IMG/VR virus record: IMGVR_UViG_3300034072_000926
Span: 401,260 to 465,259 of that record
Direction: 5' to 3' (one strand)
DNA: 64,000 bases
The translations under genes and the position numbers were made by a program. Below the pieces are notes generated by a model, which saw nothing but the letters and a program-made list of their open reading frames with translations, did not search any database and was not told where the DNA came from. This document shows, in pieces, positions 63,733-63,794 of the stretch. Each line of letters starts with the position of its first letter. Position 1 is the first letter of the stretch.

Positions 63733-63794
63733 AGAGGGCAAGTTGTTTGACCTGGGACATTCTAGCAAAGATAACCCAAGCCTATCGGCCCTCT
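63733..63794 (-). ncRNA. minimal Y RNA-like stem without a tRNA domain
   Basis: AGAGGGCCGATAGGCTTGGGTTATC-13 nt-CCCAGG..CTTGCCCTCT. Confidence 0.7.

What the first reader, a model, noticed from the sequence alone, without database searches (positions are those of the whole stretch)
63733..63794. Empty ~60-nt Y RNA stem lacking any tRNA module
Seen: the same 5' and 3' motifs enclose only TTTGCTAGAATGT. It sits just upstream of a TAAATA motif and the holin-like gene. Inference: the Ro-binding stem is a modular cassette whose cargo can be swapped or lost. This copy would bind Ro without recruiting an effector, like a sponge.
Basis: partly seen in the sequence, partly recalled or inferred. Interest (0 to 1): 0.6.

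Follow-up and report, generated by a model that had tools for sequence, protein, structure and literature searches.

The report
Minimal Y RNA in jumbo phage
The 62-base element is very probably a real gene for a short hairpin-type Y RNA, a small RNA partner of the Ro60 protein that this 465-kb phage itself encodes; it belongs to a conserved family found in other Ro-encoding phages and next to Ro genes in bacteria, so it is a new member of a known kind and not an empty shell.

Summary
Window 63733-63794, minus strand, is a 62-nt hairpin. A 7-bp lower stem, a bulged C, GA/UU pairs and an 8-bp upper stem ending in GGGUUAUC enclose 13 nt. At least ten other Y-like stems in the same genome use the same frame, most with tRNA-like inserts.

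The window is the end of a 465-kb jumbo phage that encodes a full-length Ro60. A covariance model built only from short hairpins of other phages scores the element at 61.6 bits (E about 1e-11). Thirteen of 15 pairs show compensatory changes.

Such hairpins occur in phage records that encode Ro: 16 of 21, and 10 of 10 complete ones. The figure is 0 of 7 for stem-less pattern matches and about 0.7% of phages overall. In bacteria the hairpin lies directly upstream of Ro genes.

Two related jumbo phages keep a short copy at the same position, so it is not a recent wreck. It corresponds to the known short Y RNA type (YrlB, Yrn2, phiLo Yrl2).

Ro binding is strongly inferred but untested. The "effector-less sponge" idea is possible but unsupported. 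No expression data could be obtained.

The parts
63733..63794 (-). Short hairpin-type Y RNA gene (62 nt). Lower stem 63788-63794 pairs with 63733-63739. Bulged C at 63787. GA at 63785-63786 lies opposite UU of ACUUG. Upper stem 63775-63782 pairs with 63749-63756. Conserved UUAUC at 63770-63774. The 13-nt apical segment is at 63757-63769.
   Evidence: Sequence; fold; model R1 61.6 bits, E 8e-12; covariation in the family; the only Rfam resemblance is nematode stem-bulge (Y-like) RNA RF01656 at 22.7 bits.
63802..63830 (-). Promoter-like site: TTGACA (63825-63830), 17-nt spacer containing TGT, TAGATA (63802-63807). It ends 7 nt before the first base of the hairpin.
   Evidence: This motif class occurs 57 times in the genome against 13.4 +/- 2.8 in Markov simulations. 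A better copy (TTGACA-17-TATAAA) sits 8-9 nt before the long Y RNA at window 61719-61855. The position is conserved in L077 and L078. The consensus scan did not list it because the -10 lacks the final T. Inferred, not shown.
63726..63729 (-). UUUU tract 3 nt after the stem; possible 3' end or termination signal.
   Evidence: Sequence. T-rich sequence also follows the stem in the orthologous copies in L077 and L078. Inferred.
63718..63723 (-). TAAATA, a likely promoter element of the downstream ORF and not part of the RNA.
   Evidence: Conserved with the RBS block in all three phages, although L077 has about 120 extra nt between the hairpin and TAAATA. 24 of 125 TAAATA sites in the genome lie just upstream of an RBS plus ATG, against at most 6.5% for permuted hexamers.
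63436..63690 (-). 84-aa ORF downstream, a small protein with two hydrophobic segments; the holin label is unverified.
   Evidence: Pfam gives only weak DUF7940; no PHROG. Homologues at 75% and 68% identity in two other jumbo phages, each preceded by a short Y hairpin.
63831..64000 (-). Upstream neighbour: a structured RNA whose 3' end has a T-arm and acceptor strand. It gives a weak, truncated tmRNA match and is cut by the end of the record.
   Evidence: 18.8 bits, model positions 180-374, cut at the 5' side. ARAGORN finds no tmRNA across the joined record ends, and the whole-genome tmRNA search does not report it. Tentative.
57743..57879 (-). Long Y RNA paralogue with a tRNA-like module (same stem frame).
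   Evidence: YrlA RF02553 33.1 bits and RF01656 37.9 bits, both below cut-off; R1 34.5 bits.
61719..61855 (-). Long Y RNA paralogue with a tRNA-like module, preceded by TTGACA-17-TATAAA.
62362..62466 (-). Long Y RNA paralogue with a tRNA-like module.
   Evidence: YrlA 30.4 bits; R1 33.2 bits.

Best explanation
The element is a functional gene for a minimal, hairpin-type Y RNA. It is one of three short and at least seven long Y RNA genes in a 465-kb jumbo phage that encodes its own Ro60.

The RNA is made on the minus strand. It is either a roughly 70-nt primary transcript from the promoter-like site that ends 7 nt upstream, finishing at the U tract after the stem, or it is cut out of a longer transcript of the RNA-gene array. 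Its two ends pair into the conserved bulged helix (GC-[C]-GA opposite UU-GC). This is the Ro60-binding site of Y RNAs in animals and Deinococcus. Above it sit an 8-bp upper stem and the GGGUUAUC element.

Bound to the outer face of the Ro60 ring, it would stabilise Ro and control which RNAs reach the ring's cavity. This is the 'gate' role established for Y RNAs. Its small U-rich apical loop would offer a different, or no, partner surface compared with the tRNA-like paralogues.

Shown here: the structure, family membership, covariation, co-occurrence with Ro genes, and conservation at the same locus.
Inferred: transcription, the RNA ends, Ro binding and the regulatory role.
For: 1. The genome encodes a full-length Ro60: TROVE 150 bits plus Ro60 vWA 173 bits, and 390 bits to D. 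radiodurans Rsr 2NVO.

2. Model R1, built from 20 short hairpins of other phage contigs, scores the element at 61.6 bits. It also finds two more short copies in the genome, at G000 7573-7637 and 4760-4829.

3. Covariation. On the MAFFT alignment 92.5% of cells are paired against 70% in shuffles, and 10 of 15 pairs have double changes. On 50 model-aligned hits 94.7% are paired, 13 of 15 pairs have double changes, and 0 of 500 shuffles reach this.

4. Association with Ro. TROVE is present in 16 of 21 phage records with a well-formed short hairpin, in 10 of 10 records that are at least 90% complete, and in 0 of 7 records with stem-less pattern matches. Ro occurs in only 358 of 50,697 phage records.

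5. In bacterial genomes, 4 of the 5 loci with an R1 hit have the hairpin directly upstream of a Ro gene on the same strand. Only 1 of the 75 loci without an R1 hit has Ro, and there the pattern match also lies just upstream of it.

6. A short copy lies upstream of the homologue of the 84-aa ORF in two other jumbo phages (46 and 38.3 bits), with compensatory stem changes.

7. The stem resembles eukaryotic Y-like stem-bulge RNA. RF01656 aligns UGGGUUAUC, CCCA and CAACUUG.

8. Precedent. A minimal stem-bulge-stem RNA binds phage phiLo Ro60 with a KD of about 17 nM (PMC12135203). Short hairpin Y RNAs (YrlB, Yrn2) coexist with tRNA-like ones in three bacteria (PMC4201824).
Against: - There is no expression or binding evidence.
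- The element lies about 335 kb from the Ro gene, unlike the classical arrangement within 4 kb.
- It reaches no Rfam gathering score. Y_RNA RF00019 gives no hit in the whole genome. YrlA gives no hit on the short element.
- The published motif GNCGAA reads GCCGAU here.
- The -10 of the proposed promoter is weak (TAGATA) and the terminator scan does not call the hairpin.
- The search pattern came from this element, so the conserved motif columns are circular. Lower-stem pairing in alignment A1 was partly selected by my trimming. Independent support rests on the upper stem, the Ro co-occurrence and the bacterial loci.
Confidence: 0.75

Rival explanations
1. Sponge or decoy. The short RNA binds Ro60 but recruits nothing. 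Its main role is to compete with the tRNA-module Y RNAs, or with host Y RNAs, and so hold Ro in an untethered state.
For: It has the full Ro-binding frame and no tRNA-like module. One Ro gene faces at least ten Y RNA genes, so competition is plausible. It may have its own promoter, which would allow separate timing. In Deinococcus, bound Y RNA inhibits a Ro-dependent step (PMC4201824).
Against: The recurrent Y-U-initiated, pyrimidine-rich apical loop suggests that the tip is used. Hairpin Yrl RNAs of phage phiLo still bind PNPase and form ternary complexes. Nothing here measures competition.
Confidence: 0.15
2. A terminator or processing hairpin of the upstream tmRNA-like and tRNA transcription unit, with no role in Ro biology.
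For: It lies 38 nt after a tRNA-like 3' end and is followed by a U tract. Related short hairpins sit tightly between tRNAs, for example in Sinorhizobium phage Phosso.
Against: A plain terminator would not need the conserved GCCGA, GGGUUAUC and ACUUGC sequence. It would not co-occur with Ro genes at 16 of 21 against a background of about 0.7%. It would not sit directly upstream of Ro genes in bacteria. The terminator scan does not call it.
Confidence: 0.04
3. A decaying remnant of a YrlA-type gene that lost its tRNA-like module and is no longer used.
For: Long and short forms can differ by a single indel.
Against: The short form is retained at the same locus in phages whose neighbouring protein is only 68-75% identical, with compensatory stem changes. 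The element scores among the best members of the family. Both stems are intact.
Confidence: 0.04
4. A 5' leader element that regulates the downstream 84-aa membrane protein gene.
For: It lies 42 nt upstream of the start codon, and the arrangement is conserved in three phages.
Against: A conserved TAAATA promoter-like element and RBS block lie between the hairpin and the ORF. L077 has about 120 extra nt between the hairpin and that block, so the two are separable. The same hairpin type occurs elsewhere between tRNAs with no ORF after it.
Confidence: 0.02

Closest known systems
Short bacterial Y RNAs: S. Typhimurium and M. smegmatis YrlB, D. radiodurans Yrn2 (PMC4201824)
   Same: They are second Y RNAs that coexist with a tRNA-like Y RNA. 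[quoted passage not shown] The hairpin family defined here lies directly upstream of Ro genes in bacteria, including two hits in a Deinococcales genome where no Ro gene was found in the fetched locus.
   Different: This copy is phage-encoded, about 335 kb from the Ro gene, and sits in an RNA-gene array. I could not align it with the published YrlB or Yrn2 sequences because they were not available to the tools. Published searches with YrlB found only Salmonella relatives, whereas this family is recognisable across phages and several bacterial phyla.
Yrl1 and Yrl2 of Thermus phage phiLo (PMC12135203)
   Same: They are phage-encoded hairpin Y-like RNAs with a CGA(A) motif in a stem-bulge-stem. 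They have been shown to bind a phage Ro60, and a minimal mimic suffices (KD about 17 nM).
   Different: The phiLo RNAs lie just upstream of the Ro gene. phiLo has two such RNAs, whereas this phage has at least eleven Y-like genes.
YrlA (Rfam RF02553)
   Same: The same Ro-binding frame is used by the long paralogues in this genome, which give weak YrlA matches of 24-33 bits.
   Different: The short element lacks the T, D and acceptor-like arms that define YrlA and gives no YrlA match.
Animal Y RNAs and nematode stem-bulge RNAs (Rfam RF00019, RF01656)
   Same: Lower stem, bulged C, GA/UU pairs, upper stem ending in UGGGUUAUC, and 3' strand CCCA...CAACUUG. RF01656 is the only Rfam family that aligns, at 22.7 bits, E 0.006 on a 98-nt search.
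   Different: The score is below the gathering score of 38, and there is no RF00019 match. The element has no large internal loop and is bacterial-virus encoded. Whether the similarity reflects common descent or constraint by Ro60 is open.

Membership tests
Y RNA (functional class: Ro60-bound small RNA) | 5' and 3' ends pair into a long stem | tested here: met
   A 7-bp lower stem plus an 8-bp upper stem; MFE -24.1 kcal/mol, z -2.3. Both helices covary in the family.
Y RNA (functional class: Ro60-bound small RNA) | Conserved bulged helix with a GGUCCGA / GNCGAA-like 5' strand and a UUGAC-like 3' strand | tested here: met
   GGGC-C-GA on the 5' strand and ACUU-GCCC on the 3' strand. It reads GCCGAU, one base away from GNCGAA (motif from PMC4201824). 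It aligns with the RF01656 stem.
Y RNA (functional class: Ro60-bound small RNA) | A Ro60 orthologue in the same genome | tested here: met
   A 590-aa ORF with TROVE and Ro60 vWA domains, 390 bits to 2NVO.
Y RNA (functional class: Ro60-bound small RNA) | Physical binding to Ro60 and Ro-dependent accumulation | not testable with these tools
   Needs EMSA or co-immunoprecipitation. Only indirect support is available: co-occurrence with Ro genes.
Y RNA (functional class: Ro60-bound small RNA) | Expressed as a discrete small RNA | not testable with these tools
The promoter-like site and U tract are only suggestive.
YrlB / Yrn2-type short Y RNA | [quoted passage not shown] | tested here: met
   A 13-nt apical segment with 7-nt loop UUUGCUA (5 of 7 pyrimidines). 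Loops in the family are 69% pyrimidine. Long paralogues occur in the same genome. No sequence model of YrlB or Yrn2 was available, so homology to them was not tested.
YrlA (Rfam RF02553) | tRNA-like module (T, D and acceptor-like arms) and a score of at least 69 bits | tested here: not met
   No YrlA match on the element at E up to 10. No room for the module.
Vertebrate Y_RNA (Rfam RF00019) | Score of at least 38 bits | tested here: not met
   No match in the whole genome at E up to 10.
Nematode stem-bulge RNA (Rfam RF01656) | Score of at least 38 bits | tested here: not met
   22.7 bits over the stem only, with the central 60 model positions deleted. This is a resemblance, not membership.
Intrinsic terminator | Compact GC-rich hairpin immediately followed by a U run | tested here: inconclusive
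   The scan does not call the whole hairpin. UUUU lies 3 nt after the stem, and T-rich tails follow the orthologous copies. This is compatible with a Y RNA stem that also ends transcription.

The most novel reading that the evidence does not exclude
Jumbo phages may run a multi-Y-RNA system around a single phage Ro60. The minimal hairpins would form a dedicated regulatory subclass. They are produced with, or beside, the tRNA array, sometimes from their own promoter. They would compete with the tRNA-module Y RNAs and so switch Ro between tethered and untethered states during infection.

A further possibility follows from their tips. These are often 7-nt loops starting Y-U, and in some copies a full anticodon-arm look-alike. 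They may therefore engage factors that read tRNA anticodon loops, in the contest over tRNA cleavage and repair.
Probability: 0.15. Interest if true: 0.7.

Novelty: new member of a known kind. Interest (0 to 1): 0.45.

Why it matters
Y RNAs and Ro60 are conserved from bacteria to humans, where Ro60 is a major autoantigen. What the RNA's second module does is still unclear in bacteria and phages.

This phage offers a natural series: one Ro60, at least seven Y RNAs with tRNA-like modules, and three with only a small loop. The family of about 60-70-nt hairpins described here has several useful properties:
- It is easy to recognise.
- It covaries.
- It tracks Ro genes in phages and bacteria.
- It is unannotated even in an isolated phage, Sinorhizobium phage Phosso.
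- No Rfam model reaches its gathering score on the element.
- The published survey would have missed it, because that survey kept only YrlA-like hits within 4 kb of Ro and dropped hits in tRNA arrays.

It gives a minimal, testable Ro ligand and a route to ask what the effector module adds.

Tried and rejected
- Close relatives by DNA: megablast of the last 4 kb against isolated phages found only a 54-nt match.
- The 96-aa neighbouring ORF has no relatives in viral contigs. The 84-aa ORF has none in the 480-kb phage G012.
- Rfam: no family reaches its gathering score on the element. There is no Y_RNA match in the genome.
- RtcB, a frequent Ro neighbour in bacteria, is absent from the phage.
- tmRNA: ARAGORN finds none across the joined record ends and the whole-genome Rfam search does not report the end fragment. 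The 'tmRNA' upstream is therefore tentative.
- The consensus promoter scan does not list the TTGACA-17-TAGATA site. I kept it only as a lead, after showing that the motif class is enriched.
- Bacterial pattern scan: 75 of the 80 loci examined gave no hit to model R1 and are mostly chance matches to the pattern. Only the model-positive loci were used.
- A chance inverted repeat is rejected on the model score and covariation.
- Two reviews (PMC10870794, PMC6542706) are not held.
- No protein-RNA complex prediction is offered by the tools.

Full report
**What is there**

Window 63733-63794 read on the minus strand is a 62-nt hairpin. From the 5' end it contains:
- a 7-bp lower stem (AGAGGGC with GCCCUCU);
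- a bulged C;
- GA opposite the UU of ACUUG;
- a short internal loop;
- an 8-bp upper stem (GGCUUGGG with CCCAGGUC, including two G-U pairs);
- the element UUAUC;

The minus strand folds to -24.1 kcal/mol (z -2.3). The plus strand is unremarkable (z -0.7), and the G-U pairs exist only on the minus strand.

**Setting**

The window is the last 64 kb of a 465,259-bp virus record rated complete. This is a jumbo phage with 49% G+C. It encodes a full-length Ro60: a 590-aa ORF with TROVE and Ro60-vWA domains, 390 bits to D. radiodurans Rsr and 361-373 bits to the animal Ro60 structures. Its closest isolated relative by this protein is Sinorhizobium phage Phosso (469 kb, 52.5% identity).

About 52 tRNA genes, all but one on the minus strand, form an array that runs across the ends of the record. 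At least ten further Y-like stems with the same frame lie within and beside that array:
- Long copies with inserts of 56-116 nt are at window 57743-57879, 61719-61855 and 62362-62466, and at G000 8202-8338, 6453-6583 and 4543-4660. Most of these inserts show T-arm-like sequences.
- A less typical long candidate lies about 1.2 kb upstream of the Ro gene, at G000 132226-132384.
- Two further short copies are at G000 7572-7638 and 4760-4829.

The long copies give weak YrlA matches (24-33 bits).

**Is the short form a real, conserved type?**

I scanned IMG/VR with a pattern taken from the stem frame, with a gap too small for a tRNA module. This gave 33 loci. In about 21 records the match is flanked by a complementary lower stem of 4-12 bp and contains an upper stem of about 8 bp. 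Neither stem was part of the pattern.

A covariance model (R1) built from 20 of these foreign sequences scores the element at 61.6 bits, E 8e-12. On a plain MAFFT alignment, 92.5% of cells pair against 70% in shuffles and 35-54% when the partner is slid, and 10 of 15 pairs show double changes. On 50 model-aligned hits from 26 sources, 94.7% pair, 13 of 15 pairs have double changes, and no shuffle reaches this.

Caveats: the fixed motif columns are circular because the pattern came from this element. My trimming also favoured lower-stem pairing in the first alignment. The upper stem and the tests below are independent of both.

**Link to Ro**

TROVE genes are present in 16 of the 21 phage records with a well-formed short hairpin. 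They are present in all 10 that are at least 90% complete, and in none of 7 records where the pattern matched without stems. Only 358 of 50,697 isolated-phage records have a Ro homologue.

The same pattern in bacterial genomes gave mostly chance matches. Of the 80 loci examined, 5 have an R1 hit. In 4 of these (an Anaerolineales MAG, a Verrucomicrobiota MAG, Saltatorellus and Phenylobacterium) the hairpin lies directly upstream of a Ro gene on the same strand. The fifth is a Deinococcales genome. Of the 75 loci without an R1 hit, only one has a Ro gene, and there too the pattern match lies just upstream of it.

The hairpin type to which the element belongs is therefore a Ro-associated RNA in bacteria and phages.

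**Conservation at this locus**

The 84-aa ORF downstream has homologues of 75% and 68% identity in two other jumbo phages (462 kb and 417 kb, both encoding Ro). Each is preceded by a short hairpin of the family (46 and 38.3 bits), with changed but still pairing stems.

The three-way alignment shows four conserved blocks:
- a promoter-like site just before the hairpin;
- the hairpin core;
- a T-rich tail;
- separately, TAAATA plus the ribosome-binding block before the ORF.

In one phage about 120 extra bases separate the hairpin from the TAAATA block. The short form is therefore old and maintained. It is also a unit distinct from the ORF's own signals.

**How it is probably made**

TTGACA, 17 nt and TAGATA end 7 nt before the first base of the stem. 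This motif class occurs 57 times in the genome against 13.4 +/- 2.8 expected. A stronger copy (TATAAA) sits 8-9 nt before the long Y RNA at window 61719-61855. UUUU follows the stem after 3 nt. Together these suggest a primary transcript of about 70 nt, but the -10 is weak and the consensus scan does not list the site.

The alternative is release from a longer transcript. The element starts 38 nt after a tRNA-like 3' end (a weak, truncated tmRNA match). Elsewhere, short hairpins sit within a few bases of flanking tRNAs. The two other copies in this genome do so, and so do two unannotated copies in phage Phosso that exactly fill gaps between annotated tRNAs. There, tRNA processing would define their ends.

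**What it most likely does**

By established knowledge, Ro60 recognises the bulged helix formed by the Y RNA ends. Bound Y RNA both tethers Ro to other proteins and regulates access to the Ro cavity (PMC4201824). A minimal stem-bulge-stem RNA binds a phage Ro60 with a KD of about 17 nM (PMC12135203).

I therefore take the element to be a Ro60 ligand of the short type. [quoted passage not shown]

The tip is not arbitrary. In 16 of 39 distinct short members the loop is exactly 7 nt closed by UC/GA, it begins Y-U, and it is 69% pyrimidine. Some members carry a longer hairpin that resembles an anticodon arm.

The modular view is reasonable. It matches the accepted two-module picture of Y RNAs. There is also one concrete case: a short copy in a 480-kb phage is 87% identical over 53 nt to the 5' part of a long copy here and then lacks about 60 nt.

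The 'sponge' claim is not supported by anything I could compute. It is weakened by the maintained tip and by the phiLo result that hairpin Y-like RNAs still engage PNPase. It remains a legitimate minority hypothesis.

**Comparison and novelty**

The element is not a member of Rfam YrlA or Y_RNA. The only Rfam resemblance is to nematode stem-bulge RNAs, the Y RNA relatives of worms, over the stem alone (22.7 bits, below cut-off).

The kind is known: a short Y RNA beside tRNA-like ones, and Ro plus Y-like RNAs in phages. What appears undescribed in the papers I could search is threefold:
- a sequence-recognisable family of such hairpins shared by phages and bacteria;
- their placement in tRNA arrays far from the Ro gene;
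- the size of the repertoire in this phage.

The 2014 survey kept only YrlA-like hits within 4 kb of Ro and discarded hits in tRNA arrays.

I rate the element as a new member of a known kind, of moderate interest.

**Limits**

There is no binding test. The host is unknown.

Noticed in passing
G000:C1 456888-465259 and 1-10309 (window 55629-64000 and the start of the record): About 52 tRNA genes, all but one on the minus strand, form an array that runs across the two ends of the linear record. At least 11 Y-RNA-like stems are interspersed (three short, seven or more with tRNA-like inserts). This is an unusually large Y RNA repertoire for one genome with a single Ro gene.
   Followed up: partly
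G000:C1 132226-132384 (minus strand), outside the window: A 159-nt candidate Y RNA with the same stem frame lies about 1.2 kb upstream of the Ro60 ORF (G000 129219-130991, minus strand) on the same strand. This is the classical Ro-adjacent position. Its insert shows no clear T arm.
   Followed up: partly
window 40312-40388 (minus strand): ARAGORN calls a tRNA with anticodon CUA (an amber suppressor, labelled tRNA-Pyl), and Rfam scores it as a tRNA at 62 bits. It could point to TAG read-through or recoding in part of the phage's genes.
   Followed up: no
window 63718-63723 (minus strand) and genome-wide: The hexamer TAAATA lies 8-30 nt upstream of an RBS plus ATG at 24 of its 125 occurrences (19%), against at most 6.5% for permuted hexamers. 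It is conserved before the 84-aa ORF in three phages. It looks like a phage promoter element, reminiscent of T4 late promoters (from memory).
   Followed up: partly
genome-wide, e.g. window 63802-63830, 62981-63009 and 61865-61893 (minus strand): TTGACA-N16-18-TA.A.[AT] sites occur 57 times against 13.4 +/- 2.8 in simulations, mostly on the coding strand of their region. Two of them end just before Y RNA genes.
   Followed up: partly
window 63831-64000 (minus strand): A structured RNA with a T-arm and acceptor-type 3' end gives a weak, truncated tmRNA match and is cut by the end of the record. No tmRNA is called across the joined ends, so the record may lack sequence at this point.
   Followed up: partly
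PV764938.1 420437-420499 and 420665-420734 (L082, L083, L089): The isolated Sinorhizobium phage Phosso has two short Y hairpins (59.3 and 39.2 bits). They exactly fill gaps between annotated tRNA genes and are not annotated in the record.
   Followed up: yes
L036 2190-2500; L012 2789-3230; L034 8803-9043: In smaller Ro-encoding phage contigs, short Y hairpins stand in tandem arrays of three to five copies, sometimes mixed with longer ones.
   Followed up: partly
L092 2399-2461, L098 3389-3456, L146 3301-3366, L154 5958-6018, L139 3860-3935: In bacteria of several phyla the same short hairpin lies directly upstream of the Ro (rsr) gene on the same strand. Some loci have a second copy further upstream.
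   Followed up: partly
L030 2268-2336 (G012 139251-139319) versus G000:C1 6453-6583: A 69-nt short Y hairpin in a 480-kb phage shares 87% identity over 53 nt with the 5' part of a 131-nt long copy here, including an anticodon-arm-like hairpin (loop CUUGAAA). It then lacks the T-arm part. This is a likely module indel.
   Followed up: partly
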